This document shows, in pieces, positions 1 to 23,104 of a stretch of DNA of 64,000 bases (positions are counted from its first letter, which is position 1; each line of letters opens with the position of its first letter). The DNA lies in NCBI RefSeq assembly GCF_001194135.2, contig NC_069006.1:18978538-19042537 (forward strand), given 5' to 3'. This DNA is from Octopus bimaculoides. Lineage: Eukaryota. A model generated the notes under the pieces. That model was not told where the DNA came from. It did no database searches and saw only the letters and a program-made list of their open reading frames with translations. The translations under genes were made by a program, and so were the position numbers.

Positions 1-355
1 TTCCGTCTTCCAGATCTAGAGCACAGTGCTATACAGGCTTTTAATAAGCTCTACACCTCCATGCTTCCAGATTTCAGTGGGTATTCAACATCTATCAGGT
101 GCTTTACTTTCTTTCATGTGTTTGATTGCACCATTGAATTCATTGTAAACAGGTTTGTCATCTAATGATTGGATGATTAGCTGTTGTGTCACCTTCTTGA
201 GGGTGTCATAGTCCATGACACCGGGGATATTAAGTAGGCTAACAAAGTGATTGGCAAATCTATCAAGAATCTCCAGTTTTTCCTGGAATACTGCTTGGCC
301 ACCAAGACCAATGAGTTTTGTTGCACCTCTACTCTGTGGCTCGCATACCATTCAA
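1..355 (-). mobile_element. Non-LTR retrotransposon (LINE) fragment, region just upstream of the RT domain
   Basis: ORF 85-351 ...RFANHFVSLLNIP...EFNGAIKHMKESKAPDRC resembles the 'F..+F..L.N...E+..AIK.+K..KAPG.D' segment of LINE ORF2. Confidence 0.6.
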
Positions 356-479
356 AGTCCTGAATAAAATGTTTTCATATCATTTTATCAGCATAATGCT
401 GTAGCTCTTCAGGGTATTTGTGAACTAAACCCCCATACTTTGTGTGTGTGTATATATATATATATATATAAAGAGTAAA

Positions 480-805
480 GGGTAAAGACCCCTTCAGTCA
501 TGAATGATCATGGGATTGCACCTAGAAGGTTCCCCTCTGAGGCACAAGTCCGGGTAAGTTTTTTTTGTGGAAAACCAGCAGTCATCCATGCATACCAGCC
601 TCCCCCCTCTCCACACCACCGATGTTGCCCAAGGGAAAGGCAAAGGCCAATACAGCTTGGCACCAGTGATGTCACAACTCATTTCTACAGCTGAGTGAAC
701 TGGAGCAAAGTGAAATAAAATGCCTTGCTCAAGAACACAACACACAGCTAGGTCCAGGAATCGAACTCAGTACCTCATGATTGTGAGCTTGATGCTCTAA
801 CCACT
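480..805 (-). mobile_element. tRNA-derived SINE, family 2 (head + central domain A + tail Z)
   Basis: Minus-strand head with A/B-box-like sequence, then gtgttcttgagcaaggcattttatttcactttgctccagttcactcagctg; shared with copies at 15684, 26330, 27560, 41205, 42425, 44150 and 61090. Confidence 0.7.
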
Positions 806-1059
806 GAGCTACACACACACACACATGCACACAAAACGGGCTTCTTTCAGTTTTTATCTATCAAATCTACTGAAAAGGTTTTGGTTGACCTGGGGCTATG
901 TTAGAAGAGTCTTGACCAAAGTACCTTGCACTGGGATTGAACTTGGGACTATGTGGTTGAGAAGCTAACTTCTTAATACACAGCCATGCCTATGTATGTA
1001 TTATATTCTCAAAAATTTATGCTCTTGTGCTAAGTTAGAATTTTATATATTTATTCTAG

Positions 1060-1182
1060 CGAATATTACTATTGGAACAAGCAATCTATCCATTGGTAAC
1101 TCTAATATCACAAATGTATTCAGCTCAGAACCGAGGAAGATAAAATCCGAGCATCATAGGGAGAAATTCATCAAATATTTCA
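1060..1182 (+). CDS. RHIM/death-domain cassette 1, exon a (RHIM-like motif + linker); internal exon, upstream exons lie outside the window or are unidentified
   Basis: Acceptor ttattctAG|, donor ttca|GTAAGT; 123 nt, phase 1-1. Reads (A)NITIGTSNLSIGNSNITNVFSSEPRKIKSEHHREKFIKYF. Homologous exon at 10597-10698 has the same splice context. Splices in frame to 1691. Confidence 0.85.
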
Positions 1183-1399
1183 GTAAGTAAATGCAGTTTC
1201 TATTTGTTGATTTCATATTAATCTTTTTATTTGTTTCAGTTGTTAGACTGTGACCATGCTGGGGCACTGCCTTGAGGGATTTTAGTCGAACTATTCGACC
1301 CCAGCACTCATTTCCTTTTTAAACCTGGTAGTTATTCTATCAGCTCTCTTTTGTTGAACTTCTAAGTTACAGGGACATAAACACACCAACACTGGTTGC

Positions 1400-1432
<33 letters not shown>

Positions 1433-1690
1433 GTCAGTTGATGGTGGGGGACAAGAGAGAGATGTATGGAATTGGGAGGAGATGATAAGTGAGCATGGCA
1501 CCAGCAAGACTTACATTATTTGGAAAATGCAATGGAAAAAATACAGTGAAATTGTCATGGAGAGTTGAATGTCTAACATTTAAGATAGAGTGTGAAATCT
1601 GATGGCGATTTGACTGTTATTTCTAAACAAAAACGTAAATATCAAACATTTCAATATAAAATCTTAAGAATCATGGAAATATTTTTGCAG

Positions 1691-1765
1691 AGTCTAATAC
1701 AGTACTGACTGAGAAACACCTCAACAAAATAGCCAAATACTTAGGGAATAAATGGAAGTCTGTTG
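1691..1765 (+). CDS. RHIM/death-domain cassette 1, exon b (death domain helix 1-2 start)
   Basis: Acceptor tttttgcAG|, donor gttg|GTAAGT; 75 nt, phase 1-1. Reads KSNTVLTEKHLNKIAKYLGNKWKSVG, the typical death-domain start (L..I...LG..W...GR). Confidence 0.92.
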
Positions 1766-1844
1766 GTAAGTATAAAATATACATTACTTTAGATGTTTGG
1801 CTTCTATCATATCTTTATGTCTTGTCTTTTACTTGTTTTAGTCA

Positions 1845-2205
1845 TTATATTGTTGCCATGCTGGGGCAGCACCTTGAAGAATTTTTAGTTGGATGAATCC
1901 AGTACTTTTTTTTTTTTTTTTTTTAAGCCCGGTGTTTATTCTATCAGTCACTTTTGCTGAACTGCTAAGTGATAAAGATACAAACACACCAACACTGGTT
2001 GTCAAGCAGTGGTGGAAACAAACATGCACACACACACACACGTGTGACAGGCTTCTTTCAGTTTCCATCTACCAAATCCACTCACAAGGTTTTGGTTGGG
2101 CTGGTGCTATAGTAGAAGACACTTGATCAAAGTCCCATGCAGTGGGAATGAACCTGGAATCATGCAGTTGGGAAGCAAATTTTCTTACCACCCAGCCATC
2201 CCTAC
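1845..2205 (-). mobile_element. tRNA-derived SINE, family 1 (about 400 bp, central CA/TA microsatellite), in cassette 1 intron
   Basis: Matches the full-length copies at 26859 and 56996; its 3' half is also present at the equivalent position in cassette 2 (13105-13310). Confidence 0.8.
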
Positions 2206-2311
2206 GCCTATCTAACTACAAAATAATGTTTAGTGAGTGCTAAGATACTTAATGTGATGAAGAAAAAATTTCAGTTGAAGTTGTTTTTGCTAGGAGGAGA
2301 GGAAAAGAATC

Positions 2312-2521
2312 TTAACCCTTTTGCTACCATACTTTTGTTGGAACTCTTCTTTTGTTGTAATTAATGTTGAAAATAATGAATTTATGAATATAACTGTTTT
2401 GAGATTAAGCTAGTGTTTTGAATATAAATTTGCATAAAAATTTGGGTTCAAGATTTTAATTCAAATCACTTAAAAAACAAGAAATTTGTAGCATAGAACC
2501 AAAGTCAGTATTAAAAAGTTA
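2312..2521. mobile_element. piggyBac-like MITE (degenerate)
   Basis: Left end TTAA-CCCTTTTGCTACC; right end degenerate (gtattaaaaagttag). A related left end occurs at about 14665. Confidence 0.45.
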
Positions 2522-3124
2522 GTGTTAACAAAATCTAATTCTAGACGAAGGGAGACAACTTCGAAATTGTAACGAATCAAAGTTTGAAACAATACAATGA
2601 GGAGATAAAGACATTATTAGCTAGAGGCTTAGTGAGTACAGTGGCAGGTGTGGACATATTTTGGATACAACCTTTATGCTAAGTCTCAATCACGTCATCA
2701 TGATCTTCCCTTATTTGGTAATATAGATCTTCTCACTTTACCTACCTTAATTGAATGTGTGAACAAGATGTGGACTTTGCAAGCCACGGATTACTCGTCT
2801 CAGAGATCAGTAACATTTTGACTAAGAAGTGATAAAAAGGGACTCTTTGATCCTCCCCACATGAGACAACCACTCTAGTGTCACCCAGTAAATTCCATGC
2901 TTCCCTATTCTCAATCTTTTGTCTTTTATCTTTTACTTGTTTCAGTCATTCGATTGCAGCCATGCTGGAGCACTGCCTTCAGAAATTTTAGTCAAACAGA
3001 TTGACCCCCCCCCCCCAGTACTTATTTTTCCTTTTAAGCCTGGCACTTATTCTATGATTCTCTTTTGCTGAACTGCTAAGTTACAGGGATGTAAACACAC
3101 CAACACCAGTTGTCAAGTAGTTTA

Positions 3125-3290
3125 TGTGCTTGTCTACATCACTTATAATCATTTCAGTATCACTTATTATTATCTGGATTCTTTCTATTTTCAGTCCCCA
3201 GTTTCTGCTTATCTCCATTTCTAGATCTTCATATCTGGATATTTTTTTTTCATTATCTATTTTTGTCCTTCGGAATCGATACATCATTTG
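3125..3290 (-). mobile_element. Decayed RLE-endonuclease LINE (R2/NeSL/HERO-type) C-terminal fragment
   Basis: ORF 3081-3287 EKKISRYEDLEMEISRNWGLKIERIQIII resembles the 'EK..KY.DL..E+...W......P+++' motif of restriction-like endonuclease domains. Confidence 0.55.
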
Positions 3291-3334
3291 CTATTATTAT
3301 TCTTCTTGTCAATGATATAATATTTTATTTTCAG

Positions 3335-3540
3335 GTCGGGATTTAGAAATTAAAGACGCTATGCTGGAAAACATAGAAGCAAACTACTCAAATAATGTTG
3401 AAGAACAAAGTTTTCAAATGTTAAACAAATGGTTACAGCTTTCCAAGTCGGAGACATGTACAACTAGCAAATTAGCTGAAGCACTCTTTGAGGCTGAATG
3501 TTATGATTCAATTCAATATTTACCATTAGAGGAGGAGTGA
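3335..3540 (+). CDS. RHIM/death-domain cassette 1, terminal exon (rest of death domain, RIPK1/Imd-like)
   Basis: Acceptor ttttattttcAG|, phase 1. Reads GRDLEIKDAMLENIEANYSNNVEEQSFQMLNKWLQLSKSETCTTSKLAEALFEAECYDSIQYLPLEEE*, with the death-domain hallmarks EQ.FQML.KW and T..L..AL. Stop TGA at 3538-3540. Confidence 0.92.
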
Positions 3541-3765
3541 TTATTAAAAAAAAAATGTTCTCCACCATGGTGTATGTCTTGAATAAGAAGAGCATTATTA
3601 CATCATTTAATTTCTAAATATCTGCTTATATCAATATTAATATCTGTTTATACCAGTATTAATATGACATATATTTAAGAACCAAAATCTTTTAAGTGCT
3701 TGGGGTCTCTATGGGTCTTAATCCAGCCTTGCCTACACATATATGTAGTTCAAAATATAAACAAC

Positions 3766-3783
3766 AATAAACCATAAAATAAA
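3766..3783 (+). promoter_or_regulatory. Tandem AATAAA poly(A) signals, cassette 1
   Basis: AATAAA at 3766-3771 and 3778-3783, about 230 nt after the stop; same arrangement in cassette 2. Confidence 0.7.
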
Positions 3784-3800
3784 TTTTTATTTTTCAAAAT

Positions 3801-4800
3801 TGTTGTGGGAGAATTCTGAACACCTACATGCGACTGAAAACGGACTAACAGATTTTCAATAAATAAAGAACTGTGTGAACTATCAGGAAGTTGATAGCAT
3901 TGATTGTCCATATTGGTTACTACGTTAGTTTAATATCATAACTATATTTGGAGTAGTACGGAGTGCATTCTGTGTTAACATAATAATACTGTGATAGGTT
4001 ATTCTAGATAACCATATCCGAGTAATTATTTAGGTAATACTATTCTTACACACACGTCATATTTTTGGTGATGAGGATATTTGAACCCATGCTGGACAGA
4101 TTATTGTTTGAACATGGAAGATTTACTAGCTTTGGTAATTCAATTACAGAAACAGCAGTTGTTGGAATTGCAGAAGCAACAGCAGCTGTTAGTACAACGG
4201 CTTCAGAAGAAAACAGAAAATATATCAAAAGGATGTGTTATAATACTATTCCACAGCCATACCAACAATCCACATATACAACTTTCAAACACATTTACCA
4301 ATGTACAACCATATTGATAAATAAATTCCATAAGTAAATTACAACCACTCCTAAATACGCAACTAAACAGCAACAGCTCTATTAAGTCATACAGAATTAT
4401 AATCCCAACCATCTTCCATAGTGTAATATAAAAGTAAAAGCTTAATGACCACATTATTTCAATCAATCAGTATATAGACAGGATGTGTAGTTCATTCTGA
4501 CATGGTCACAAACTCCATCTGAGAGTTTGCATATAATCCAGAGGAGGGTACAACTTTTCCTGCTTACTTTAGAAGGTATGAAGAAATTTTTAAAGAAGAG
4601 TGCTCTGACTAGCAAGATGAAAAATCATACCCGACTTTTGTTGAGAAAGTTGGCATCAGCCAAGCATGAGAAATATTGAAATTACATATTACCAAAGAGA
4701 CCAGGTTTTGAAGAAGATGTGAATATTTTGTCAAAGATTTTCGGCGGAAAACCTCTTTATTTAATATGCATTGGTAATGCATGAATATTACAGAAAAATA
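3801..4800 (+). mobile_element. 3'-truncated Ty3/Gypsy (Mag / K02A2.6-like clade) LTR retrotransposon: 5' LTR, PBS and decayed gag
   Basis: UTR homology with cassette 2 stops at 3800 and TGTTG begins at 3801; putative LTR to about 4059 with internal AATAAA. PBS TGGTGATGAGGAT at 4066-4078. Gag starts at 4114 (MEDLLALVIQLQKQQ); 4502-4800 reads NSI*EFAYNPEEGTTFPAYFRRYEEIF...TRLLLRKL...HEKY*NYILPK...LSKIFG..SLFN with stops and frameshifts. Confidence 0.8.
4066..4078 (+). promoter_or_regulatory. Primer-binding site complementary to tRNA-Ser(GCU) 3' end
   Basis: TGGTGATGAGGAT versus expected TGGCGACGAGGAT (11/13; both mismatches are CpG>TpG), based on the tRNA-Ser(GCU) 3' end ATCCTCGTCGCCA recalled from eukaryotic tRNAs. 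Confidence 0.65.
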
Positions 4801-5023
4801 AGATGTATATTTTATTATATATACTGGAATTGTTAATAGGGATAGGGAATGTAAGAGATTTAAAATTAATGAACTAACACCAGATATGTTTAAATAATCA
4901 ATTTTTGTGAAAGGTTTAATAGCAAAGAAAAATGTGGAAATTCATAACCAAATTCTGACTAAATTAGAGCAGAATCAGAAGTATTAGTGAGTAAAAAGAG
5001 AGAAAAATGACTGACAGCAAATA

Positions 5024-5312
5024 TACTAATTACAGGGTGGCAGCGCTAAGCAGTGATGTATGTAAATAGAAGGTTATTAGCAGCTCAAATATGCTAGAAG
5101 CATATTCCAAACCATAAAAATGCTGTTCACTGTGTTTTGCCACAGAGAAAACTTCTTGCTGTAACAAATGGTGTAAATAAACCAGCATCAGCTCACAGTG
5201 TGACAAAACACAGCAAATGGCTTTCTTATGGGTTCAAATATGCTTGAGACATATTTGAACTGATATAACCTTGGACTTCCACTAATATCCACTGAAACAA
5301 GGTATCAACTAA
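5024..5312. repeat. Downstream block shared by both cassettes (copy 1), with twin AATATGC-N5-GCATATT dyads
   Basis: Colinear with 14982-15265 (roughly 80% by eye); dyads at 5088-5106 and 5232-5260. Confidence 0.8.
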
Positions 5313-5838
5313 GGTAGACACATGTCTAATATTATATATTATAAATAATGTTATACATTATAACATCATATATCAATATGTATTGCCTTTTGGGCAAGAT
5401 CGAAATGTAGTGCATATGTGTGTGTGCAAGAGTTCCCTAGCTTGCATATTAAATATTCTGTCAGTTAAATCTGGTCTGTCAGCTAGTGTCTGTCCTGGAT
5501 AAACTTTGTGATACTGGTCGAGCAATGAAAATTAAATTATGGAGATGTATTTGCATAGCAAGTGACTTGATCTGAGATCCTGTGCTGAAACAAAATCAAT
5601 TGCAGCATGGAAGATGACTGTAAGCCATTTAAGAATGCACAAAAAACTGTTAGATTCACTTCTACATTTAAATTTTAATTTGTGCCAAAATATTTTCGTC
5701 ACTCTGAAACCATGACCGATTCACTGACAAAACTTTGTGCTGCATCTAGATATTCTTAAATGGCTTCTATAATGCAATTGTTTTTGAAAATGTTGAAGTG
5801 AATCTAATGGTTTTTTGTTTTCCTTGAAGCTGCAATTG

Positions 5839-5887
<49 letters not shown>

Positions 5888-6227
5888 TATAATGTAAAGA
5901 AACCACAAAAAGAAAAAAAGACCCTAGTGAAAAACAGCAACCCAGGATTTCGTGGATGAGATACATAAATATATTACTAATGATCCGATAAAGCAGAGAC
6001 CTAGAAGATGAAATACGACAAAGCAGTTATTAACAGAACTTTTTTATTTTTATGAATTTTCACAAATCTTTTTCAATTCTGTCTTCTGCAATATGGAGTT
6101 AATAAGATGATGCAAAAAGAAAAAAAATTTTTTTAAATCCCCAACCCCTCAATTTTTTTTCGGACAGTCCGAATCTACCATTTGTTTCTCTTTATAATTT
6201 CCAAATAATTTTTTAATATATTTTTGG

Positions 6228-6725
6228 AAAAAAGTCAATTGACAGTCTTCACACTTTTTCACATAATCCTGGACTTTATGTGAAATGCCAGTGTCTGCTG
6301 CATGTCCATCAACGATATTATTTTCTACTCTAGGCATAAGGCCTGAAATTTTGTGGGAGGGAACAGTTGATTAGATTGACTAATAGTACACAACTGGTAC
6401 TTAATTCATCAACCTTGAAAGGATGAATGGCAGAGTCGATTTCGGCAGAATTTGAACTCAGAATGTAAAGACATGAAATACCGCTAAGCATTTTGCCCGG
6501 CATGCTAACGATTCTGCCAGCTCGCCATCTTCAAGAAACATCTTTTCTACTCAAGGTGCTAGTTTCAAAATGTTTTTTGCATAATCATATCAATTCCATT
6601 ATGCAGAGGACAGAATCGAAAAAGTTATGAGAGGTTTTAGTAGGTCAATTGACAGTCTTGACACTTTCACACATAATCTTGGACATAATGTGAAATGCCA
6701 GTGACATGCTGCATGTCCATCAACA
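6228..6725 (-). mobile_element. Two decayed Gypsy/Ginger-type integrase zinc-finger (H2C2) fragments
   Basis: 6228-6322 reads VDGHAADTGISHKVQDYVKKCEDCQL; about 6600-6725 reads GISHYVQDYV*KCQDCQL...GIDM. The two share about 85 nt of direct repeat and are separated by a SINE. Confidence 0.5.
6340..6535 (-). mobile_element. tRNA-derived SINE, family 3 (central gactttgcctttcatcctttc domain)
   Basis: Shares sequence with copies at 18700-18845, 18865-18990, 55230-55420 and 55770-55895. Confidence 0.65.
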
Positions 6726-7199
6726 AGATTAGCAGACAGCCAGCCATACAGTGGTACGACATATAGTCTAAGTAGAAGAAAACCTTTTTAAGAGGAAAAA
6801 TGAAGTTGGAAGAGTGGTGAAAAAGTTTTAGGTACTTGTGGTCGCTGTAACCGATGGTGTGCCAGTTCTTCTATGTGTGTATAAAGATATAATTAAAACA
6901 ATATGTATACACCCACATAAATACACACACACATATACAACAAAGCCTAATGGTGTGAGTTTTCTAAAACTCCTTTAGGCACAAATGGTTTTCACAATAT
7001 GCAAACCCAATTGTATGAATGGATCATAAGATTGAACTGCAAAGTAAAAATTTGAAATGGCGTTGACAATAATTTTTGTTTCCATGGATGCGCATAAACA
7101 TGTACTCCAGCCTGGAAAACGCTATAACTGGTTAATGTGTATGACTGGGCATGCATAACAGGACATACAGAGAAACTCCTTTTCTTTTAAATATATTAC

Positions 7200-7995
7200 T
7201 AATGATCCAATACGACAGGCTTCTTTCAGTTTCTGTCTACCAAATCTGCTCACAAGGCTTTGGTTGGCCAAAGGCTATGGTAGAAGACACTTACCCAAGG
7301 TGCCATGCAGTGGGACTGTACCTGAAAAGTATGTGGTTGGCAAGCAAGCTTCTTACCACACAGTCACTCCAATCATTCACATAACCTATTTACATAATGT
7401 GAATGATAATATTTTGAAAACAAAAATGTTTAATATTTAATTTCATATGTAGGAGTAGCTGTGTGGTAAGAAACTCGCTTCCCAACCACATGGTTTTGGG
7501 TTCAGTCTCACTGCATGGCACCTTGGGCAAGTGTCTTCTACTATAGCCTCAGGCCGACCAAGTCTTTTTGAGTGCATTTGGTAGATGGAAACTGAAAAAA
7601 GCCCGTCGTATATGTGTGAAATTTATACCCCTTTATTTGTTTCAGTCATTTGACTGTGGCCATGCTGGAGCACCGCCTTTAGTTGAGCAAATCGACCCCA
7701 GAACTTATTCTTTGTAAGCCTAGTACTTATTCTATTGGTCTGTTTTGCTGAACCGCTAAGTTACGGAGATGTAAACACCAGTATCGTTTGTCAAGTGATC
7801 TTAGGGGGACAAACACAGACACACACATATATATAAGACGGGCTTCTTTCAGTTTCCATCTACCAAATCCACTCACAAGGCTTTGGTAGGCCCGAGGCTA
7901 TAGTAAAAGACTCTTGCCCAAGGTGCCATGCAGTGGGACTGAATCCGGAACCATGTGGTTCGTAAGCTAGCTACTTACCACACAGCCACTCCTAC
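7200..7995. mobile_element. Cluster of family-1 SINEs in alternating orientation (- 7200-7375, + 7450-7610, - 7625-7995)
   Basis: Direct match to the family-1 consensus; 7625-7995 is essentially full length. Confidence 0.8.
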
Positions 7996-9169
7996 GCCTA
8001 TAAAAAACAAAAGATGAAGACAGATGTATGAACAACAAGTAAGTGTATTAGTTTCACGCTTAGGAAAATGAAGAAGTCTTTTACGTTTCAAGCCTATGCT
8101 CTTCATCAGAAAGGAATAAAAGAAAATAAACAAAGAGAGAACTTGTAGAGTTTAGCAGTCCAACATGGTGAATATATGTATGTATTTGTGTGTCTGTGTC
8201 CCCACCACCATCGCTTGTCAACAGATGTTGGTGTGTTTACGTCCCTGTAAGTTAGCGGTTCGGCCCAAAAGACTGATAAAATAAGTACTAGGCTTACAAA
8301 GAATATATCTTGGGGTTGATTTGTTCGACCAAAGGCAATGCTCCAGCATGGCTGCAGTCAAAAGTATAACAGAATAATTGTGCATGCATGCATGGGAGAG
8401 AGAGAGAGAGAGAAACTGATAAACTAAATACAATTTTGTAATTGAAATACCAGTGACTTTAAAATTATGTCCCTTGCGTCTGTGACTGCCACTACCACCC
8501 ACTCCCACTTCATCTTGCTGTTTCACTTTCTTTTCCTCACCTTCGTGGGCAGCCACATATCGTGTTTCTTGTGCTCTAACTTCTTGTTGAACATCATTCA
8601 TAGAAAATAGTAGCGACCACCATAAAGAAATACAAAGGTTAGTTAACTTTTCAAATATGTTTTGGTTTTAAATAACCTCATTCTTTTTGTTAGTTTTTAT
8701 TTTATGCTTGTTAGATCTCTATCAAATCCTGAAACTTTCTTTAACTTAGAATAAACTATCTTAATACTGTGCTGCCAACCAGGAAGTACCTGCACTACAT
8801 AAAACCACTTATAACTTTGTGTTTGTTTGGAATTTTCAGAAAATGTTTGTGAATCTGTGTTCTATACACATGAATTCATATGTGTTCTATACACAGGAAT
8901 TCATATGATTATGAAAACTAAAATATTTGGTGTGCGTTTAAGGCAATATAACTTTATTTTAGCACAGCTCACAAATACCTCATGCCTTCCTTGCACTGAT
9001 ATTTATTGATATTTTTCAACGTTTTTCTCCCCATAAACTCATTTAATGGAATGATGATGCACTCAAGGGCAGTCAATTGCTGGGATTTATTAATAAGGAA
9101 AAATTTGAAAATTAGGGGTAGAGTTTAAAAAATTAAGAAAAGAAATGTTTTTTTCATAATCATATGTGG

Positions 9170-9545
9170 AGGCATGGCTGTGTGGTGAGAAGCCTACTTC
9201 CCAATCACATGGTTCTGGGTTCAGTCCCATTTCATGGCATCTCAGCCAAGTGTTTTCTACTATATTCGCAGGCCAACCAAAAACTCGAGAGTGAATTTGG
9301 TAGATGAAAACTGAAAGAAGCCCACATATATATGGCTATTTATATATGTATATAGCCATAAGTGTGTGTCTTTGTGTCTATGTTTGTCCACACATCATCA
9401 CTTGACAACGGGTGTTGGTGTGATTATGTCCCTGTAACTTTGCAGTCCAGCAAAAGTGACTGATAGAATAAATGCCAGGTTTAAAAATAAGCCCTGGAAT
9501 TGATTTGTTTGATTAAAACCCCTTCAAGGTGATGCTCTAGTATGG
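9170..9545 (+). mobile_element. Family-1 SINE
   Basis: Head ggaggcatggctgtgtggtgagaagc, central TA repeat and 3' body match the consensus. Confidence 0.75.
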
Positions 9546-9886
9546 GCTCACAACTTTTTTAGTACAATTTTTTGTTGCATGGGATCAAAACTATGAAATT
9601 CTTCACACATTCTCCTATCATTGAATCTAAGATAAAATAATATATTTTGTTTTTAAAATATAAATGTTATTTAGATCTAAATTTGACTGGTGGCGTTAGT
9701 TACTCTCCTATAACGTTGCTACAAATTTTGATGTAAACCTTTTTCTACTGGATCAAATCTCAAATTTTTTTTATGCCAAAATGTAGCTAGAGACCAGCCC
9801 TCTTCCAAAATGTTATCAGTTTTCAATTTGATTAAGAACTGAATTAACGACAAGTTCTGAAATATACTGCGTATGAGTAAATTGAA

Positions 9887-9924
<38 letters not shown>

Positions 9925-10596
9925 GAAGGTTTGAAAATGCACTTATTTTTTAAAAATATTTATTTACTTAACCGGTTTCACTTTTTTAGAAAAAGATTAT
10001 CAAAAGTCTTTTGAGAATAATAAAAAATGTTAAAAAACAGTCTGAGTATTAAAATGCATATATACATTCTTTGATGATAAAATATATTTAAAGTATAAAG
10101 CTTTGTATGAACTTTGTAGTGTTACATACTGATTGTCACACATTCTCTGATATATACTGCGTATGAGTATATATGTATGTATGTATGTATGTATATGTCA
10201 GAAAAAATATATTCAAGTAGAACAATTCAATCTTTTTGAGGAGTCCAAAAGGAGAGAAAAATAATATGAAAATGAAGAAAGTTTGCCAATGTGAGGACTA
10301 AAAGTATTTTGGATTACAAGACAGTGATTGAAACCTTTGGCATTATGCTGTGCTTGAGAAGAAGACCCATCAAGCTAAGTGAAACTATAGTCTCAATATA
10401 TACGACAGGCTTCTTTAAGTTTCCATCTATCAAATCCACTCAGTTTGGTTTGCCTCAGGATTTATTAGAAGACACTTGGTCCATGATGTCACTTTGCGAA
10501 GCAAACTTCTTAACACACAGCAATGCCTATGTATGTATTATATTCTCAAAAATGTATGATCTTGATGCTATGTTAGAAATTTTATATTCATTTCAG

Positions 10597-10698
10597 CAAA
10601 TATTAGTATTGGAACGAATGTTGTAGTCATGGGTGACTCTAGCATTGCAGAAAAGCCAAAATGTGAGAGTGATAACGATCAATTCAGCTGCTATCTCA
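10597..10698 (+). CDS. RHIM/death-domain cassette 2, exon a (RHIM-like motif + linker)
   Basis: Acceptor cattTCAG|, donor ctca|GTAAGT; 102 nt, phase 1-1. Reads (A)NISIGTNVVVMGDSSIAEKPKCESDNDQFSCYL; an in-frame 21-nt difference from cassette 1. Confidence 0.82.
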
Positions 10699-10734
10699 GT
10701 AAGTAAAAGTAGTTTCTATTTGTTTACTCTTTTT

Positions 10735-11110
10735 ACTCTTTTACTTGTTTCAGTCATTTGACTGCAGCCATGCTGGAGCACCGCCTTTAGTCGAACAAAT
10801 TGACCCCAGGACTTATTTTTTGTAAGCCTAGTACTTATTCTATTGGTCTCTTTTGCCGAACTGCAAAGTTATGGGGACGTAAACACACCAGCATCGGTTG
10901 TCAAGCGATGTTGGGGGGACAAACACAGACACACAAACACACACACATATATATATATATATATACATATATACGACGGGCTTCTTTCAGTTTCCGTCTA
11001 CCAAATCCACTCACAAGGCTTTGGTCGGCCCGAGGCTATAGGAGAAAACACTTGCCCAAGGTGCCATGCATGTGGTTGGTAAGCAAGCTACTTACCACAC
11101 AGCCACTCCA
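10735..11110 (-). mobile_element. Family-1 SINE, young full-length copy in cassette 2 intron
   Basis: Near-identical (reverse complement) to 56996-57402, with tail (gtaaaaga)n. Confidence 0.8.
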
Positions 11111-11217
11111 ACCTTTTACTTGTATCAGTCATTAGAAGGAGGCCATGCATATATATATGTATGCACATATATATATATGTGTCTGTACATATATATATGT
11201 ATGCACATATGTATATG

Positions 11218-11267
<50 letters not shown>

Positions 11268-11339
11268 TCTATAAATATATACATTGGGTTATCCCTGTAA
11301 ACAATGCATTTTTTTATACTTCTTTTATTTTCCAAAATT

Positions 11340-12060
11340 AAGATAAACAAAGTTCTTTTCTAATCTAAAATATACTCTCCTTCGTTTTCTACAATGCTCT
11401 TCTGTCTATCTGGTAGACTTGCAAGGCCCCTCTTCCAAAATTCTCTTGTCCGTGACGAAAAATACTCCTCCAGTACTGTTCTGACCTCGTCTACAGAATT
11501 CATATTTTTTCCATCCAAATGATTTTGAAGACTGCGGAATAAATGATAATCCGATGGGACAATGTCCAGCGAATATGGTGGGTGGGGCAAAAAAGGTTCA
11601 TTCATGAGATGTGACAGCAAAGAAGAGCACACATTCACTTGCAGCACGTGATTAGACTCGGAAAGTTTGTGAGCAACCTATTGACCCAATTTGCTTACTT
11701 TTCCGATGGCACACAGGTGTCAATGAATGGGTGAATGACCAAATCCAAGCTTTTCTGCTAGTTCCTCAACACTTACAATGGGATTTTGTTCCACTAGGGT
11801 TTGCAGGATGTCCTAATTGAGCGCTACAAATCTTCCAGGATGAGGCTCGTCTTCTAGTCTAATTTCCGTCTTGGAATTTCCGGAACCACTGTTGACACTG
11901 GCTTACAGTTATTGTCGAATCCCAATATACTACATTAATATTCCTCACACTTTCTGTTGCGTTGTTGCCTTTATTGAAATCATAAAGCAAAATAGCTTTG
12001 AAAAAATAACTGTTAAAATCAAACAGCACTCTTTAAAATTTGCAGTAAGAACAATCACAA
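11340..12060 (-). mobile_element. Internally deleted, decayed mariner transposase
   Basis: Minus strand reads LLYDFNKGNNATES...QWFRKFQDGN...KLGQ*VAHKLS...CSSLLSHLMNEPFL, joined directly to PHPPYSLDIVPSDYHLFRSLQNHLDGK...GEYILD* (WVPHEL- and YSPDL-type motifs; DD core deleted). Confidence 0.88.
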
Positions 12061-12967
12061 GGTGAACTTACTACCTGCTTTTATAGTAAGTGAATACAGG
12101 TAGTTTATCCTGTTCCCCTGTGACTTTTAGTTCATGCAATTGATAAAAACTGCATTATTTATGAGATGACCCTTATAAATGAGTAACAGTAGAGAACTAC
12201 AGGTGTCACTTCATGATGACCATTTCAAACAACTCGTTTAGTTAATTAACAAAAACATTACATCATTGTAAAGAAACCGTTTTCATCAGATAAATTCATG
12301 AACTTCAAAATATAGCACATTCAATATGATTTGACATAGTTTACAATCTATACAACAAAAATATTTCTAGAAATAGCAGCAGAAACAATATAAATGTTTT
12401 TGCTCTGTGGATTGTAAACTATGTTAAATCATTTTGAATGTCCTTTATTTTGAAGTTCATGAATTCGTCTGAGGAAAACTGTTTTTTTTCACAATGATGT
12501 AATGTCTTCATTAATCAATTAAAGGGTTCATTAGAAACAGTCATAATTGATTGACACCTGTACCTCTGCAGTTACTCGTTTACATTTTATTCACCTGTCT
12601 CGAAATCTGCTCTTCATAAATATTATGGACCATATATTTAATATAATGTACATGTCAAGAGTGGATTTCTTCATTCAGCTTGGTTTAATAGTCTACATAC
12701 ACTGCAAGAATATCATTTGGCTGGTATTTATGTAGCAAGTTTGATGTTTACATAATATTGTTGTGTGTGTGTGTGTGTGTGTAAGTTGCCAACTAAGGAT
12801 TACAAGGATTTAAAAGATTTGGGGATGACAAAACACCCCATGTGACTAACACAGGGTTAAGATAGAGTGTGAAATTTGATGGCGATTTAATTGTTATTTC
12901 TAAACAAAAAAGTAAATATGAAACATTTCAATATAAAATCTTAAGAATCATGGAAATATTTTTGCAG

Positions 12968-13042
12968 AGTCTAATACAGTACTGACTGAGAAACACCTCA
13001 CCAAAATAGCCAAATACTTAGCGAAAAAATGGAAGTCTGTTG
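12968..13042 (+). CDS. RHIM/death-domain cassette 2, exon b
   Basis: Acceptor tttttgcAG|, donor gttg|GTAAGT; 75 nt, phase 1-1. Reads KSNTVLTEKHLTKIAKYLAKKWKSVG; only 3 nt differ from 1691-1765. Confidence 0.9.
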
Positions 13043-13384
13043 GTAAGTATAAAATATCCATTACTTCAGATGTTTTGCTTCTATCATATCTTTGTTTTAT
13101 CTTTGACTTGTTTCAGTCATTAGACTGTGGCCATGCTGGTGCACCACCTTGAAGAATTTTTAGTCAGATGAATTCAGTACTTTTTTTTTTTTTTTTTTGA
13201 AGCCAGGTGTTTATTCTATCAGTCACTTTTGCTGAACTGCTAAGTTACAGAGATGCGAACACACCAACCCTGGTTGTCAAGCAGTGGTGGAAACAAACAC
13301 ACACATACACACGTGCACATAGGTTTGAAATAAGGTGGAAAAAGTAGTACTTGAATACCAAAGGTAGAAAAAAATGTTCTTTTA

Positions 13385-13522
13385 TTGAAGCTGGAAAAAC
13401 CTTCACAAGCTGTTACTCAGATTTTTATGTAACCTATCATCAGACAGTTGTGATACTGAATTATCAAATATTTCTGATGAAACTCTGAGTAAGAGTTTGT
13501 GGAGGATTTTTTCCAGCTTCAA
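13385..13522. repeat. Long imperfect foldback (hairpin) element
   Basis: Nested arms ttgaagctggaaaaa/ttttttccagcttcaa, ccttcacaagctgttactcaga/tctgagtaagagtttgtggagg (19/22), tcatcaga/tctgatga, tgata/tatca. Confidence 0.75.
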
Positions 13523-13534
13523 AAAATTAGTTCA

Positions 13535-13770
13535 TCATTTCTTTGGTGACATCCCTCCAGGATCAGGTCATGAATTTTCATGATGCTTTCATTCGTTTGG
13601 GAGGTCGACGGTCGCCTTGCATGAGGTTGGTCTTCAAATGACTAGTGACCCTTCCTACAGCATGGAAACCACTCATAAACTTGTGCTTCGCTTATGGCAG
13701 CATCCTTGTAAGCTGCTTGAAGTTTGACAACTGTTTCAGCGACCATTTTTCCCTAGTATAAATTTTTTCA
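13535..13770 (-). mobile_element. Mariner transposase N-terminal (HTH) fragment
   Basis: AETVVKLQAAYKDAAISEAQVYEWF...SFEDQPHARRPSTSQTNESIMKIHDLIL matches the mariner HTH-SGRP region. Confidence 0.75.
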
Positions 13771-13847
13771 TTATGTATCCCTCGAAATCGATACATTATT
13801 TACTATTATTATTGTTGTTGTCAATGATATAATATTTTTATTTTCAG

Positions 13848-14053
13848 GTCGAAATTTAGGGATTGAAAATGCTGACATAGATATAATACAAAGTGACAAC
13901 GTACTTAATACTGAAGAACAGAGTTTTCAAATGTTGAACAAATGGTTGAAGATGTCCAAGCCAGAGAAAGGTACAACTGGCAATTTAGCTAAAGCTCTCA
14001 TTGATGCTGATTGTCATGGTGCGATTCCATATTTACCATTAGATGAAGAGTGA
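13848..14053 (+). CDS. RHIM/death-domain cassette 2, terminal exon
   Basis: Acceptor tttttattttcAG|, phase 1. Reads GRNLGIENADIDIIQSDNVLNTEEQSFQMLNKWLKMSKPEKGTTGNLAKALIDADCHGAIPYLPLDEE*; same length as the cassette 1 exon, no stops or frameshifts. Confidence 0.9.
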
Positions 14054-14259
14054 TTAGCAGAAAAAAATTTCTCCACCGTGGTATGTTTTGAATAAGAAGA
14101 CCATTATTATATCATTTAATTTCTAAATATCTGCTTATATCTGTATTAATATTTGATTATACCAGTACTGATATGACATATATTGAAGTACCAAAATATT
14201 TTAAGTGTTTAGGGTCTTAATCCTGCCTACATATATATGTTATTCGAAATATGAACAAT

Positions 14260-14277
14260 AATAAACCATAAAATAAA
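14260..14277 (+). promoter_or_regulatory. Tandem AATAAA poly(A) signals, cassette 2
   Basis: AATAAA at 14260-14265 and 14272-14277, within a 3' UTR clearly homologous to 3541-3800. Confidence 0.7.
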
Positions 14278-14981
14278 TTTTTATTTTTCAAAATGAAAAA
14301 AAAACTAACAGTAAGATGGAAATTGTTCATTTTTGTATTCTTCTAGTTTCTTTATTTTGGAAAAGTTTTCTCCTCCTTTTTTAATTGCAAAGTCTTTGAT
14401 CAGATCCCTAAAATTAGTTTTACGTAACACATCTACGTTTATAATTAGTATAGATAAAGTATCCTGAATATTATCTTACCAAGTTTAAAGTGATTTCTTT
14501 TGTGCCGTAAACCATTTACCATTTCTCAGATTCCCTGCTTCTCTTGATGCACTAAGCATGTATTTATTTTGTATAATGATTAATCCAATGTTGTATGTAG
14601 GTATTCAGGATGTGCATCAGTTGTTAGCTGAACACTTTTAATTTTCAAATGTACCTTGCCTGCTTAACCCTTTTAATACCAACCTGCCTGAAACTACCCC
14701 TGGCTCTATGATAACAACCCATGTTTTCATATTACTAACTACTAAGTCAAAAGAAATTCAATTTATTGCATCTTTAGCGACTTCAGATATTGCTTAATCG
14801 ACAATGTATTATTTGAAAAGTGAATAAAACAAATTCTCATACTGAGGAGGGATGGGGGCTGAGATTCTAACTAGGGGTGCTGAGCACCCCATAGCCCGCC
14901 CACCCCCCGTGGCTACGTGTCTGTGAGAGGACAGACTACTTCTACCCGAAATTCATTCAACTAGCAGAGCCTGAATACTTT

Positions 14982-15265
14982 TACTAATTACAGGGTGGCA
15001 GCAATAAGCAGTGACGTGTACAAATAGAAAGTTATTAACAGCTCAAATATGCTAGGAGCATATTCAAAACCGTAAAAATGTCATTAAGTGTGTTTTTGCC
15101 ACTGAGAAAATTTCTTGCGATGGTGTTAATACACCAACATCAGCTCCCAGCGTCACAAAACACAGTGAACTGCTTTCTTACTGGTTCAAATATGCCTCGA
15201 GCATATTTGAACTGGTAATAACCTTGGACTTGCACTAATGTCCACTGAAACGGGGTATCAACTAA
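14982..15265. repeat. Downstream block shared by both cassettes (copy 2)
   Basis: Homologous to 5024-5312; dyads at 15046-15064 and 15184-15212 (12-bp perfect arms GTTCAAATATGC/GCATATTTGAAC). Confidence 0.8.
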
Positions 15266-15683: not shown

Positions 15684-15853
15684 AAGGCGCATAGCTCAGT
15701 GGTTAGAGCGTCGAACTTACGATCGTGGGTTGTGAGTTTGAATCCCGAACCGGGCTGCGTGTTGAGTTCTTGAGCAAGACACTTTATTTCACGTTGCTCC
15801 AGTTTCACTCCGCTGTAGAAATGAGTTGCAATGTCACTGGTGCCAAGCTGTAT
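15684..15853 (+). mobile_element. Family-2 SINE 5' part (tRNA-like head + central domain A), fused to the CRE LINE
   Basis: ggcgcaTAGCTCAGTGGttagagc...GTTTGAATCC A/B boxes; follows the 480-805 consensus up to ggtgccaagctgtat. Confidence 0.8.
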
Positions 15854-17495
15854 AGACCCTCCTACCTCTCTTTCAGTAACCAAATCATCGTCTCTGCCTC
15901 AGGAGTCAAACAAGGCGATCCACTCGGGCCTGCTCTGTTCGCATTGGGCATTGATGGCATCACTAAGATGGGGCTCAAGCTAGACCTTAATATCTGGTAT
16001 CTTGACGATGCTTCTTTGGAGGGGGAGGGACATCTAGACAGGGTTCTTGCCATTGCAAACAAAATGGTTAAGGAGCTTGGTCGTAGGGTCCCCAAGTAAA
16101 TAGCGCTAAATGTGAGCTCTGGATCCTCAACCACCTGGCTTCTCAACATCAACAATCTATAGACCTATTTGTAGAGCCTTTCCCTTCCATTGCAGTTCCT
16201 CCCTCATCGGTGTGGTGCTCCTTAGGAGCCCCAATTACTGACCTTGATTCTATATTTGCTTAAAGTCAGCTCCTCTGAGTAATTCCCATCTTGCCTCCAT
16301 TGCTTCAACAACCTAATTTTTGAGAGGTTTGAATACTTGGTCAATGTCAGGTTCTCTCCAGCGTGCTATGATCAGGCTGCATTGTACAAGCAATTTGGGG
16401 GTCTTGGTCTTTGTAAGTTTACATCCCTCTCTCTCCCCTCCTTCTGTTCCTCTATTCACGCCTGCTCCATCCTGGTGAGCAACATCTTCTCCTCTCCAAC
16501 ATGGACCAGTTCCAACAGGGAGTTCGATGAAGTTCTCCAACACAGTAGTGAATTGGGCTTGTCTGCTCCTGAGAAGGCGGAGGACTGTCGGAGTCAGAGA
16601 GCTTGGGACAATATAATTTCAAATGCCACCTTCAACTCATTCTTCATCCAGTTGGACCAGTTTCCAAGGTGCTGCTTACTATCTGCTTGCACCAAATACT
16701 CAGGTGACTGGTTTGATGCCATTCCTGTGGCTAACATCAGTGGCCCACTCAGCTTGGACGAACTTTGTGTTTCTATTGCCCTCAGAGTGGGAGCTGATGT
16801 CTGCATGAGTTTCAGTTATTGTTGTGTCAAGCTCCTTGACTTCACAGGCCTCCATGGTTTTTCTACCCGCCTGAATGCCGATCACTTCAAGCATCATACG
16901 GAATTAAACCTTACACTCGAGAGGAGTTTGGCCTGGGAAAACATCCCCTCCATCATGGAACCATCTGGGTTGTCCACATGTGATGGGAAAAGACCCGACA
17001 GCCTCACCCTGTACCCCTTGTTGAGAGGCAGATGCTTTGTCTGGGACATCACAGTTAGTGACTCCTTTGCTTCTTCTCACATCCTGGATGCTGTGGCCAG
17101 GGTGAGATCCACAGCTTCTGTGGCTGAGTGGAACAAAATCCTAAAGTACTACGATCTGTCAGCCAACTACATTTTCCATCTTGTGGCGCTTGAGATTTTT
17201 GGTGGGGTTGGACCACTGACTGCAAGATTCCTGTCTTTACTGGCAGATCTCCAAGCAGAGGTAACTGGTGAATCTTATAAGGGTGCTTGGTTGTTCCAGC
17301 GCATCAGCCTTCCCATCACCCGCAGCACCGCTACAAGTGTGGTGTGCCTCAATAGTCATTAGAGAAGTTTTCCCAGCACCCCAAAATGTTCAACCTAAGG
17401 TGGTGAATTGTTTTTGTTTTTTGTTTTGTTGTTTTTCTTCTTCTCACTCTTATGTATATATTTAATAAAGGGTTTACTAACCATGTAATATATCT
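15854..17495 (+). mobile_element. 5'-truncated CRE-clade non-LTR retrotransposon (RT C-terminal half + zinc knuckle + RLE endonuclease), frameshifted
   Basis: GVKQGDPLGPALF and WYLDD (RT); frameshift near 16095 (VNSAKCELW); 341-aa ORF 16337-17362 with QFGGLG, SQRAWD, degenerate C.C..D..G.H knuckle, DGKRPD, WDITV, E..K..KY, LFQRIS; 3' UTR with AATAAA near 17463. Confidence 0.85.
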
Positions 17496-21921: not shown

Positions 21922-23104
21922 TATATATATNNNNNNNNNNNNNNNNNNNNNNNNNNNNNNNNNNNNNNNNNNNNNNNNNNNNNNNNNNNNNNNNNNNNNN
22001 NNNNNNNNNNNNNNNNNNNNNNNNNNNNNNNNNNNNNNNNNNNNNNNNNNNNNNNNNNNNNNNNNNNNNNNNNNNNNNNNNNNNNNNNNNNNNNNNNNNN
22101 NNNNNNNNNNNNNNNNNNNNNNNNNNNNNNNNNNNNNNNNNNNNNNNNNNNNNNNNNNNNNNNNNNNNNNNNNNNNNNNNNNNNNNNNNNNNNNNNNNNN
22201 NNNNNNNNNNNNNNNNNNNNNNNNNNNNNNNNNNNNNNNNNNNNNNNNNNNNNNNNNNNNNNNNNNNNNNNNNNNNNNNNNNNNNNNNNNNNNNNNNNNN
22301 NNNNNNNNNNNNNNNNNNNNNNNNNNNNNNNNNNNNNNNNNNNNNNNNNNNNNNNNNNNNNNNNNNNNNNNNNNNNNNNNNNNNNNNNNNNNNNNNNNNN
22401 NNNNNNNNNNNNNNNNNNNNNNNNNNNNNNNNNNNNNNNNNNNNNNNNNNNNNNNNNNNNNNNNNNNNNNNNNNNNNNNNNNNNNNNNNNNNNNNNNNNN
22501 NNNNNNNNNNNNNNNNNNNNNNNNNNNNNNNNNNNNNNNNNNNNNNNNNNNNNNNNNNNNNNNNNNNNNNNNNNNNNNNNNNNNNNNNNNNNNNNNNNNN
22601 NNNNNNNNNNNNNNNNNNNNNNNNNNATATATATATATATATACACATATATACACATGTATATAAATGTATATATATATCTATCTCTATTTATAAATTT
22701 TTTAATATATGTATTGAAACATATTCAAGATGGTTGGGAGTACACCTTTTGAGGAAATCTGTATGCCATGTTTTTCTCTTTCTCACTTCCTCTTTTTCTT
22801 TCTTGCCTCCTTTCCCCCTCTCTCTTCATACGTACATACATACATACATACATATATCCGTATGTATATGTATATATATATATCTATATCTATATATATA
22901 TATATTTGTCTCTCTCACAACTGTAAGTGAAAAGTTCATTGAGATTTTTTGTATTTGATTTATCAACAAATTTTATGTTTGATGAGCATAATATACTTGG
23001 AAACTTCTTCTGGCCAATATAAGCTAAGCTTCCCCATGTAGTCCAACAGAAAACACTTCAAGACACATAAAACAGACAGATGGAAGACATCAGATCGACA
23101 TTAA

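What the first reader, a model, noticed from the sequence alone, without database searches (positions are those of the whole stretch)
3541..10596. Cassette 2 has no visible start or kinase exon: alternative 3' tails of one gene, or a kinase-less Imd-like paralog
Seen: the 7 kb between cassette 1's stop and cassette 2's first exon is mostly LTR, SINE and MITE sequence; I found no kinase motifs (HRD/DFG) and no convincing ATG-bearing exon with a phase-1 donor. Every intron in both cassettes is phase 1, so any upstream phase-1 donor can join either cassette in frame, and mixed paths (e.g. 1060 to 1691 to 13848) are also in frame. Inference, two models: (a) one RIPK1-like gene whose upstream exons lie before the window and choose between two RHIM-death-domain tails by alternative splicing and polyadenylation; (b) a separate short Imd-like adaptor with a small first exon I could not recognise.
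Basis: inference. Interest (0 to 1): 0.7.

Follow-up and report, generated by a model that had tools for sequence, protein, structure and literature searches.

The report
Beheaded duplicate of an Imd-like gene
The 7 kb stretch is the spacer between two tandem copies of a small, kinase-less RIPK1/Imd-like death-domain adaptor gene of Octopus bimaculoides, and the second copy has no visible start because its own first two coding exons have been destroyed or deleted in this species.

Summary
Window 3541-10596 (Octopus bimaculoides chromosome CM046626.1) has no kinase exon and no credible ATG exon that joins cassette 2 in frame. All cassette introns are phase 1.

- **Cassette 1** is the 3' end of a 302-aa protein that has only a death domain (RefSeq XP_014771875.1). 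Its two 5' exons lie 1.6 and 4.4 kb before the window, and none encodes a kinase.
- **Cassette 2** is a separate gene from a whole-gene tandem duplication (XP_014771873.1, 116 aa).
- **In sister species**, O. sinensis and O. vulgaris, cassette 2 keeps its own first exon (MDESREMHR) and a large N-terminal exon. Both are paralogous to cassette 1's exons.
- **In O. bimaculoides**, the first exon survives as a relic at 8580-8637. A 10-bp deletion removed its ATG.
- **The N-terminal exon is gone.** 0.84 kb at 9550-10392 replaces 3.8 kb of O. sinensis sequence.
- **What remains** can encode only a death-domain-only protein from ATG 10629, downstream of the RHIM-like core.

I could not test whether cassette 2 is expressed, decaying, or rescued as an alternative tail.

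In passing: the cassette 1 protein carries Imd-like caspase-site/IAP-binding motifs (DEID|AVPL).

The parts
1060..1182 (+). Cassette 1, RHIM-like exon (exon 3 of the 302-aa gene XP_014771875.1). It encodes NITIGTSNLSIGNSN... and is phase 1 at both ends.
   Evidence: Translation and splice sites. 100% match to P0151/P0004.
1691..1765 (+). Cassette 1, first death-domain exon (SNTVLTEKHLNKIAKYLGNKWKSV).
   Evidence: The exon lies in a block (1580-2044) that is 92% identical to 12857-13315.
3335..3540 (+). Cassette 1, last death-domain exon, including the stop codon.
   Evidence: The end of the called 302-aa gene falls here (L001 2912 = window 3540).
3541..3800 (+). Cassette 1 3'UTR, with AATAAA at 3766 and 3778. 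It is duplicated after cassette 2 (14054-14294, AATAAA at 14260 and 14272).
   Evidence: Block 3245-3800 aligns to 13763-14294 at 80.6%. Signal positions.
4114..4704 (+). Gag-like retroelement fragment. It holds the counterparts of the 5' exons that sister-species annotations attach to cassette 2: MEDLLALV... from 4114 (O. vulgaris model) and MRNIEITYYQRDQ at 4666-4704 (O. sinensis model). Their donors are phase 2 and phase 0, so neither can join 10597 in frame.
   Evidence: tblastn of P0002. P0163 sequence. Weak DUF7083 hit (E 0.0055, below the Pfam cut-off). Coordinates. Phases were read from the sequence.
8580..8637 (+). Relic of cassette 2's own first coding exon, the paralogue of cassette 1's MDGSSGLHR exon and orthologue of the O. 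sinensis MDESREMHR exon. A 10-bp deletion after 8623 removes the ATG. The AG used as acceptor in the O. sinensis model is AA here. The GTTAGT donor at 8638 is intact.
   Evidence: Three-way alignments. Coordinates. The block 8562-8890 is 88-95% identical to O. sinensis, against 50-80% just upstream.
9550..10392 (.). Site where cassette 2's large N-terminal exon is missing. This 0.84 kb of AT-rich sequence, unrelated to O. sinensis, stands where O. sinensis has 3.8 kb (L002 20376-24206) containing that exon (L002 22855-22948, with homology running to about 23100).
   Evidence: Synteny breakpoints. No DNA or protein remnant of the exon anywhere in the spacer or window.
10597..10698 (+). Cassette 2, RHIM-like exon (NISIGTNVVVMGDSS...). 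The ATG at 10629-10631 (context GTCATGG) is the start of the 116-aa RefSeq model, downstream of the ISIG core. A two-codon upstream ORF (ATG TTG TAG) precedes it.
   Evidence: Gene start L001 10001 = window 10629.
12968..13042 (+). Cassette 2, first death-domain exon.
13848..14053 (+). Cassette 2, last death-domain exon, including the stop codon.

Best explanation
The interval is the spacer between two tandem paralogues of a kinase-less RIPK1/Imd-like adaptor gene.

**Ancestral gene layout**
1. A short first exon: 5'UTR plus MD.S...HR, with a phase-2 donor.
2. A large exon encoding a disordered N-terminus, with a phase-1 donor.
3. A RHIM-like exon.
4. Two death-domain exons.

**Copy 1** keeps this layout. 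Its first two coding exons lie before the window.

**Copy 2 (cassette 2)** was duplicated whole and still has all parts in O. sinensis and O. vulgaris. In O. bimaculoides it has been beheaded.
- The first exon is a relic at 8580-8637. A 10-bp deletion removed its ATG.
- The N-terminal exon was lost in a deletion or replacement at 9550-10392.

**Inferred consequence.** If the promoter at about 8.5 kb still fires, the relic exon acts as a non-coding leader spliced from 8637 to 10597. Translation would then start at ATG 10629 and give a 116-aa protein that is only a death domain. It would lack both the N-terminal signalling region and the RHIM-like core. Such a protein would most plausibly act as a decoy or modulator of copy 1's death-domain interactions, or it is on the way to becoming a pseudogene.

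**Shown:** the gene structures, the paralogy, the two lesions and the absence of a kinase. **Inferred:** transcription, the leader splice and the decoy role.
For: **Separate genes**
- The window lies on O. bimaculoides chromosome CM046626.1, with a 302-aa and a 116-aa Death-only gene called separately.
- The same pair is present in O. sinensis (311 and 205 aa) and O. vulgaris.
- The spacer is collinear with O. sinensis and O. vulgaris.

**Copy 1 structure**
- P0151 maps to L004 10331-10356, about 12638-13116, and then the three cassette 1 exons.
- Death is its only Pfam domain.
- No RIPK1-kinase tblastn hit anywhere in 78.7 kb (window plus the 14.7 kb upstream of it) of O. bimaculoides sequence.

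**Whole-gene duplication**
- Cassette 1's N-terminal exon aligns to the O. sinensis cassette 2 exon region: P0004 residues 55-123 against L002 22899-23093, E 4e-10.
- L002 22775-23321 is collinear with L003 6399-7098.
- The first exons align three ways.

**Lesions in O. bimaculoides**
- The ATG-removing 10-bp deletion.
- No remnant of the N-terminal exon.
- No assembly gap in the interval.

**Remaining reading frame**
- XP_014771873.1 and UniProt A0A0L8HKK4 both start at MGDSS.
- The death domain is nearly full length (Pfam positions 2-78 of 86).
- Block 8562-8890 is unusually conserved with O. sinensis.
Against: - No transcript data could be consulted, so expression, the transcription start and the 8637-to-10597 splice are inferred.
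- dN/dS of cassette 2 between O. bimaculoides and O. sinensis is 1.02 (40 non-synonymous against 10 synonymous changes). Exon divergence is about the same as intron divergence. This fits neutral decay as well as a fast-evolving immune gene.
- The intact copy 1 also shows dN/dS of 1 or more, so this test has little power.
- Loss of the N-terminal exon rests on one assembly.
- The O. sinensis and O. vulgaris 5' models disagree with each other upstream of the shared exons.
Confidence: 0.72

Rival explanations
1. Cassette 2 is an unexpressed or decaying partial pseudogene in O. bimaculoides. Having lost its start and N-terminal exon, it has no function, and its open frame persists only by chance.
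For: - dN/dS is 1.02 against O. sinensis, and exon divergence (about 18%) matches intron divergence (13-17%).
- Two independent 5' lesions.
- The RHIM-like core lies upstream of the only usable ATG.
Against: - All three exons keep open frames, splice sites and the polyadenylation signal.
- Length differences in the RHIM-like exon among copies (102, 123 and 129 nt) are all multiples of three.
- The region around the relic exon is more conserved than its surroundings.
- The certainly intact copy 1 also has dN/dS of 1 or more, so a neutral-looking ratio does not indicate decay in this family.
Confidence: 0.3
2. Cassette 2 is used as an alternative 3' tail of copy 1. Transcripts read through the polyadenylation site at 3766-3783 and splice from copy 1's phase-1 donor (before the window, or 1182 or 1765) to 10597, 12968 or 13848.
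For: - All junctions are phase 1, so every such path is in frame.
- Cassette 2 has no start of its own upstream of the RHIM-like core in this species, yet it keeps an intact acceptor and open frame.
- The ISIG core would be translated only in this way.
Against: - RefSeq gives copy 1 two isoforms, both ending in cassette 1, and gives cassette 2 its own gene.
- Cassette 2 was born with its own promoter-proximal exon, which is still conserved.
- Each cassette has its own conserved polyadenylation signals.
- No chimeric copy 1 N-terminus with cassette 2 tail was found in the 5.8-billion-protein collection. That test is weak, because no transcript-derived copy of either gene was found there either.
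Confidence: 0.12
3. Cassette 2 is an intact short Imd-like adaptor in O. bimaculoides, with a small ATG-bearing first exon somewhere in 3800-10596.
For: - This is the structure of the orthologue in O. sinensis and O. vulgaris.
- Five ATG-to-phase-1-donor candidates exist in the spacer.
Against: - The orthologous first exon has lost its ATG, and its donor is phase 2.
- The exon it should join is absent.
- The five candidates are about what shuffled sequence gives. Three lie in SINEs, and none is conserved as an exon.
Confidence: 0.06

Closest known systems
Insect IMD (immune deficiency adaptor)
   Same: - Copy 1 is a roughly 300-aa protein without a kinase and with a C-terminal RIP-type death domain.
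- It has an amyloid-motif-like stretch just before the death domain.
- It has a caspase-type site followed by Ala-x-Pro near the N-terminus: DEID14|A15VPL. Compare LEKD|A in Drosophila and LTTD|A in Tenebrio, as described in PMC6626034.
- A leafhopper 268-aa death-domain protein (P0072) matches at E 4e-13.
   Different: - Orthology was not tested by phylogeny.
- The D|A-x-P motif occurs up to three times.
- Cassette 2 in O. bimaculoides lacks this whole N-terminal part.
- Cassette 2 in O. sinensis and O. vulgaris has lost the Asp before the A/V-x-P motifs.
- Molluscs were reported not to have an Imd adaptor (PMC9835746).
Vertebrate RIPK1 (C-terminal RHIM plus death domain)
   Same: - The death domain's best solved-structure matches are RIPK1 death domains (E 2e-12, against 6e-5 for TRADD). 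It is 33% identical to a gecko RIPK1.
- I-x-I-G..N..I-G lies 34-38 residues before the aligned death-domain start. The RHIM of RIPK1 lies 31 residues before it.
- NCBI names both genes RIPK1.
   Different: - No kinase domain in the protein or in 78.7 kb of genomic sequence.
- The protein is 302 or 116 aa, against about 670-790 aa.
- The core tetrad has T, N or S where RIPK1 has Q.
- The Pfam RHIM model is not matched.
Death-domain-only regulators and truncated duplicates of immune adaptors
   Same: The 116-aa product of cassette 2 would be a bare death domain next to its full-length paralogue. This is the usual layout of decoy or dominant-negative duplicates (my own knowledge, not tested here).
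   Different: No evidence here that it is expressed or that it binds copy 1.

Membership tests
RIPK1 (receptor-interacting serine/threonine kinase 1) | N-terminal protein kinase domain | tested here: not met
   Pfam finds only Death in P0151, P0004, P0002 and P0001. tblastn with two RIPK1 proteins finds only the death-domain exons in the window, L004, L002 and L003.
RIPK1 (receptor-interacting serine/threonine kinase 1) | RIPK1-type C-terminal death domain | tested here: met
   The top four solved-structure hits are RIPK1 death domains, E 2e-12 to 2e-11. The next is TRADD at 6e-5.
RIPK1 (receptor-interacting serine/threonine kinase 1) | RHIM (I/V-Q-I/V-G core) between the kinase and the death domain | tested here: inconclusive
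   ITIGTSNLSIG (copy 1) and ISIGTNVVVMG (cassette 2) sit at the RHIM's position relative to the death domain. Among 154 related proteins the strict pattern is found only in copy 1 and a bovine RIPK1. Pfam RHIM is not hit at E up to 1.
Imd-type adaptor | Small (about 240-300 aa) kinase-less protein with a C-terminal RIP-like death domain | tested here: met
   Copy 1 is 302 aa with the death domain at residues 218-294. The size range for insect IMD is from PMC6626034. Cassette 2 in O. bimaculoides is only 116 aa.
Imd-type adaptor | N-terminal caspase cleavage site (x-x-x-D|A) exposing an IAP-binding motif | tested here: inconclusive
   At sequence level copy 1 has DEID|AVPL. O. sinensis has DETD|AVPL, and transcript P0076 has KID|AMPV, aligned at the same place. 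Cleavage and IAP binding were not tested. Cassette 2 lacks the exon in O. bimaculoides and lacks the Asp in the sister species.
Imd-type adaptor | Orthology with arthropod Imd by phylogeny, and a role upstream of Relish/NF-kB | not tested
   No tree was built. Only pairwise similarity to one insect protein, E 4e-13. Function cannot be tested with these tools.
Death domain superfamily (Pfam PF00531) | Match above the Pfam gathering score | tested here: met
   48.4 and 43.1 bits against a cut-off of 22.6.

The most novel reading that the evidence does not exclude
Cephalopods have true Imd-type adaptors: a caspase-cleavable N-terminus exposing A-V/M-P IAP-binding motifs, a RHIM-like amyloid motif and a RIP-type death domain. 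This component has been reported as not found in molluscs. The O. bimaculoides locus would then capture one tandem copy being converted, by loss of its 5' exons, into a death-domain-only decoy that damps the pathway.
Probability: 0.25. Interest if true: 0.65.

Novelty: new member of a known kind. Interest (0 to 1): 0.4.

Why it matters
For genome annotation, this explains why the RefSeq model of cassette 2 is a 116-aa stub named RIPK1. It also shows that neither gene is a kinase, so the name is misleading.

For evolution, the locus is a dated, step-by-step example of 5' decay of a tandem immune-gene duplicate:
- loss of the ATG by a 10-bp deletion;
- deletion of an exon;
- gene conversion over the middle exon;
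- a chimeric tail in O. vulgaris.

For immunology, the more interesting point lies in the parent gene. It combines an Imd-like caspase/IAP-binding motif, a RHIM-like motif and a RIP-type death domain in a mollusc. If this is functional, it would extend the Imd-type adaptor beyond arthropods and nemerteans, and would make the origin of the RIPK1/Imd split testable.

Tried and rejected
- **Protein searches with spliced tails.** Searches with the spliced cassette tails did not return copy 1's full protein. It came only from the HMMER scan of representatives and a cluster look-up.
- The spliced tail could not be handed to the representative search, so P0001 was used instead.
- **Missing record.** P0004 has no encoding record. 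P0151 did, and gave the upstream DNA.
- **Search for the lost exon.** I looked for any remnant of the missing N-terminal exon in the spacer with blastn (word sizes 7 and 9) and tblastn at E up to 50. Only microsatellite or chance hits came back.
- **Enumeration of candidate first exons.** The count is near the chance level.
- **Sister-species 5' exons as starts.** MEDLLALV... and MRNIEITYYQRDQ were considered as possible O. bimaculoides starts. I rejected them because their donors are phase 2 and phase 0, they lie in a gag-like retroelement fragment, and they differ between annotations.
- **Pfam RHIM.** Never hit.
- **dN/dS as a test of function.** Uninformative, because the intact paralogue also has a ratio of 1 or more.
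- **Literature.** Searches found no description of this octopus gene pair.


Full report
**Identity of the window.** The cassette 2 tail is 100% identical to XP_014771873.1 / A0A0L8HKK4 of Octopus bimaculoides, a 116-aa protein. Its gene lies on chromosome CM046626.1 of assembly GCA_001194135.2. Window position equals L001 position plus 628, and equals L004 position minus 14725.

**Check of the observation.**
- Cassette 1 exons are 1060-1182, 1691-1765 and 3335-3540.
- Cassette 2 exons are 10597-10698, 12968-13042 and 13848-14053.
- All have canonical splice sites.
- Both tails contain a death domain above the Pfam threshold.
- The duplicated blocks are 957-1409 / 10494-10911 (74%), 1580-2044 / 12857-13315 (92%) and 3245-3800 / 13763-14294 (81%).
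- The spacer has no gap. 37% of it is repeated elsewhere in the window, mainly SINEs. It also holds a gag-like fragment (weak DUF7083 hit).
- There is no long open frame on either strand, and no kinase similarity.
- ATG-to-phase-1-donor candidates number 5, against 2.3 +/- 1.4 in shuffles. Three are in SINEs.
- The negative observation is therefore correct.

**What cassette 1 belongs to.** The gene call ending at 3540 is a 302-aa protein. I recovered it as P0151 (XP_014771875.1, isoform X1), with a 300-aa isoform X2, P0004.
- On L004 it maps to a first coding exon at 10331-10356 (MDGSSGLHR, phase-2 donor).
- A single large exon follows at about 12638-13116 (160 residues, phase-1 donor), then the three cassette 1 exons.
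- These upstream exons lie about 4.4 and 1.6-2.1 kb before the window.
- Death is the only Pfam domain.
- No kinase exon appears in the 14.7 kb upstream of the window, and no gene is called on L004 upstream of copy 1's first coding exon.
- The kinase half of model (a) is therefore refuted.

**Cassette 2 is a whole-gene duplicate.**
- The O. sinensis locus (L002) and the O. vulgaris locus (L003) are collinear with window 1-15000.
- Both carry two separately called death-domain genes.
- The O. sinensis cassette 2 protein (P0002, 205 aa) has exons upstream of the RHIM-like exon at L002 17113-17183 (...MDESREMHR) and 22855-22948 (KNETVMPSS...VVPKPTGE).
- The first of these aligns base for base with copy 1's MDGSSGLHR exon, including about 45 nt of leader and the donor.
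- The second, with its flanks, is paralogous to copy 1's large N-terminal exon. P0004 residues 55-123 match L002 22899-23093 at E 4e-10. L002 22775-23321 is collinear with L003 6399-7098.
- The O. vulgaris cassette 2 model (P0163, 292 aa) reads that exon at nearly full length.
- The ancestral duplication therefore copied the complete gene.

**What happened in O. bimaculoides.**
- The orthologue of the first exon is at 8580-8637.
  - O. sinensis reads ACCACCATGGATGAATCCAGAGAAATGCATCG|gttagt.
  - O. bimaculoides reads ACCACCAT----------AAAGAAATACAAAG|gttagt.
  - The ATG is gone and the donor is kept.
- Between the syntenic anchors 9550 (= L002 20376) and 10392 (= L002 24206), the window has 0.84 kb of unrelated AT-rich sequence where O. 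sinensis has 3.8 kb that includes the N-terminal exon.
- No trace of that exon is found in the spacer or the window.
- The 5' exons that sister-species annotations add further upstream have counterparts at 4114 and 4666. They lie in the gag-like fragment, differ between annotations, and have phase-2 and phase-0 donors. They cannot start an in-frame cassette 2 protein here.
- The longest reading frame left to cassette 2 on its own starts at ATG 10629 (GTCATGG), as in the RefSeq and UniProt models. This lies downstream of the ISIG core.

**Functional state, inferred.**
- dN/dS for cassette 2 between O. bimaculoides and O. sinensis is 1.02.
- The intact copy 1 is even higher: 27.5 non-synonymous against 1.5 synonymous changes over two exons compared with O. 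vulgaris. The ratio therefore does not separate decay from fast immune-gene evolution.
- In favour of residual function:
  - the frames, splice sites and polyadenylation signals are intact;
  - length changes in the RHIM-like exon are in multiples of three;
  - the block 8562-8890 around the relic exon is 88-95% conserved.
- I rank the possibilities as follows:
  1. a death-domain-only product from a transcript with a non-coding leader;
  2. a pseudogene;
  3. occasional use as an alternative tail of copy 1.

**Comparison with known families.**
- The death domain is closest to RIPK1 among solved structures. It is about equally similar to a reptile RIPK1 and to an insect 268-aa death-domain protein.
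- The I-x-I-G..N..I-G motif sits where RIPK1 has its RHIM, but the Pfam RHIM model is not matched.
- Copy 1's N-terminus carries DEID|AVPL, ETK-AVPI and KTD|AVPQ.
  - O. sinensis has DETD|AVPL.
  - A 299-aa protein (P0076) of the same architecture, from a 1.1-kb Logan contig of unnamed species, has KID|AMPV, KTD|ANPI and KPD|AMPI, aligned at the same N-terminal place.
- This resembles the conserved caspase site and IAP-binding motif of insect IMD, as described in PMC6626034.
- PMC9835746 states that the Imd adaptor had not been found in molluscs.
- In function, copy 1 therefore looks Imd-like. Membership by orthology was not tested.
- Cassette 2 lacks this module in all three species.

**Verdict.**
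- The missing start is explained by two lineage-specific lesions.
- Both gene models are already in RefSeq, so novelty is modest.
- The Imd-like features of the parent gene are the most interesting lead.

Noticed in passing
L004 12638-13116 (about 1.6-2.1 kb before the window); proteins P0151, P0162, P0076: Copy 1's N-terminal exon carries caspase-site plus IAP-binding-like motifs: DEID|AVPL, ETK-AVPI and KTD|AVPQ. They are conserved in O. sinensis, and appear as D|AMPV, D|ANPI and D|AMPI in a 299-aa protein of the same architecture from a short Logan contig of unnamed species. This is the hallmark of insect IMD activation.
   Followed up: partly
L003 9926-21000 compared with L002 1-9000 and 27593-31147: In O. 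vulgaris the copy 1-type gene ends in a cassette 2-type last exon with its downstream flank (L003 15981-18372, 95% identical to O. sinensis cassette 2). Copy 1's own last exon has no counterpart. The array has undergone unequal crossing-over or conversion. The 84-aa O. vulgaris model also skips the middle exon.
   Followed up: partly
window 1580-2044 and 12857-13315: This block holds the middle exon plus a shared SINE. It is 92% identical between the two cassettes, while the other duplicated blocks are 74-81% identical. It is also equally close to both O. sinensis copies. This looks like a gene-conversion tract.
   Followed up: partly
window 1060-1765 compared with L003 9926-15097: Copy 1 shows 27.5 non-synonymous against 1.5 synonymous differences between O. 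bimaculoides and O. vulgaris over the RHIM-like and middle exons (dN/dS about 5). This suggests positive selection or conversion.
   Followed up: partly
window 4050-5000: This is a gag-like retroelement fragment (weak DUF7083 hit). Out-of-frame pieces of it are used as first exons in the O. sinensis (MRNIEITYYQRDQ) and O. vulgaris (MEDLLALV...) gene models of cassette 2. These are probably annotation artefacts.
   Followed up: partly
window 8562-8890: This block around and downstream of the relic first exon is 88-95% identical to O. sinensis, against 50-80% just upstream. It is also recognisable next to copy 1's first exon (L004 10383-10471). It may be a promoter-proximal regulatory element.
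   Followed up: no
window 1-360 (minus strand), 15850-16400, and N runs from 21931: LINE reverse-transcriptase fragments flank the cassettes. The window contains 14 assembly gaps totalling 5040 N, all downstream of the finding.
   Followed up: no
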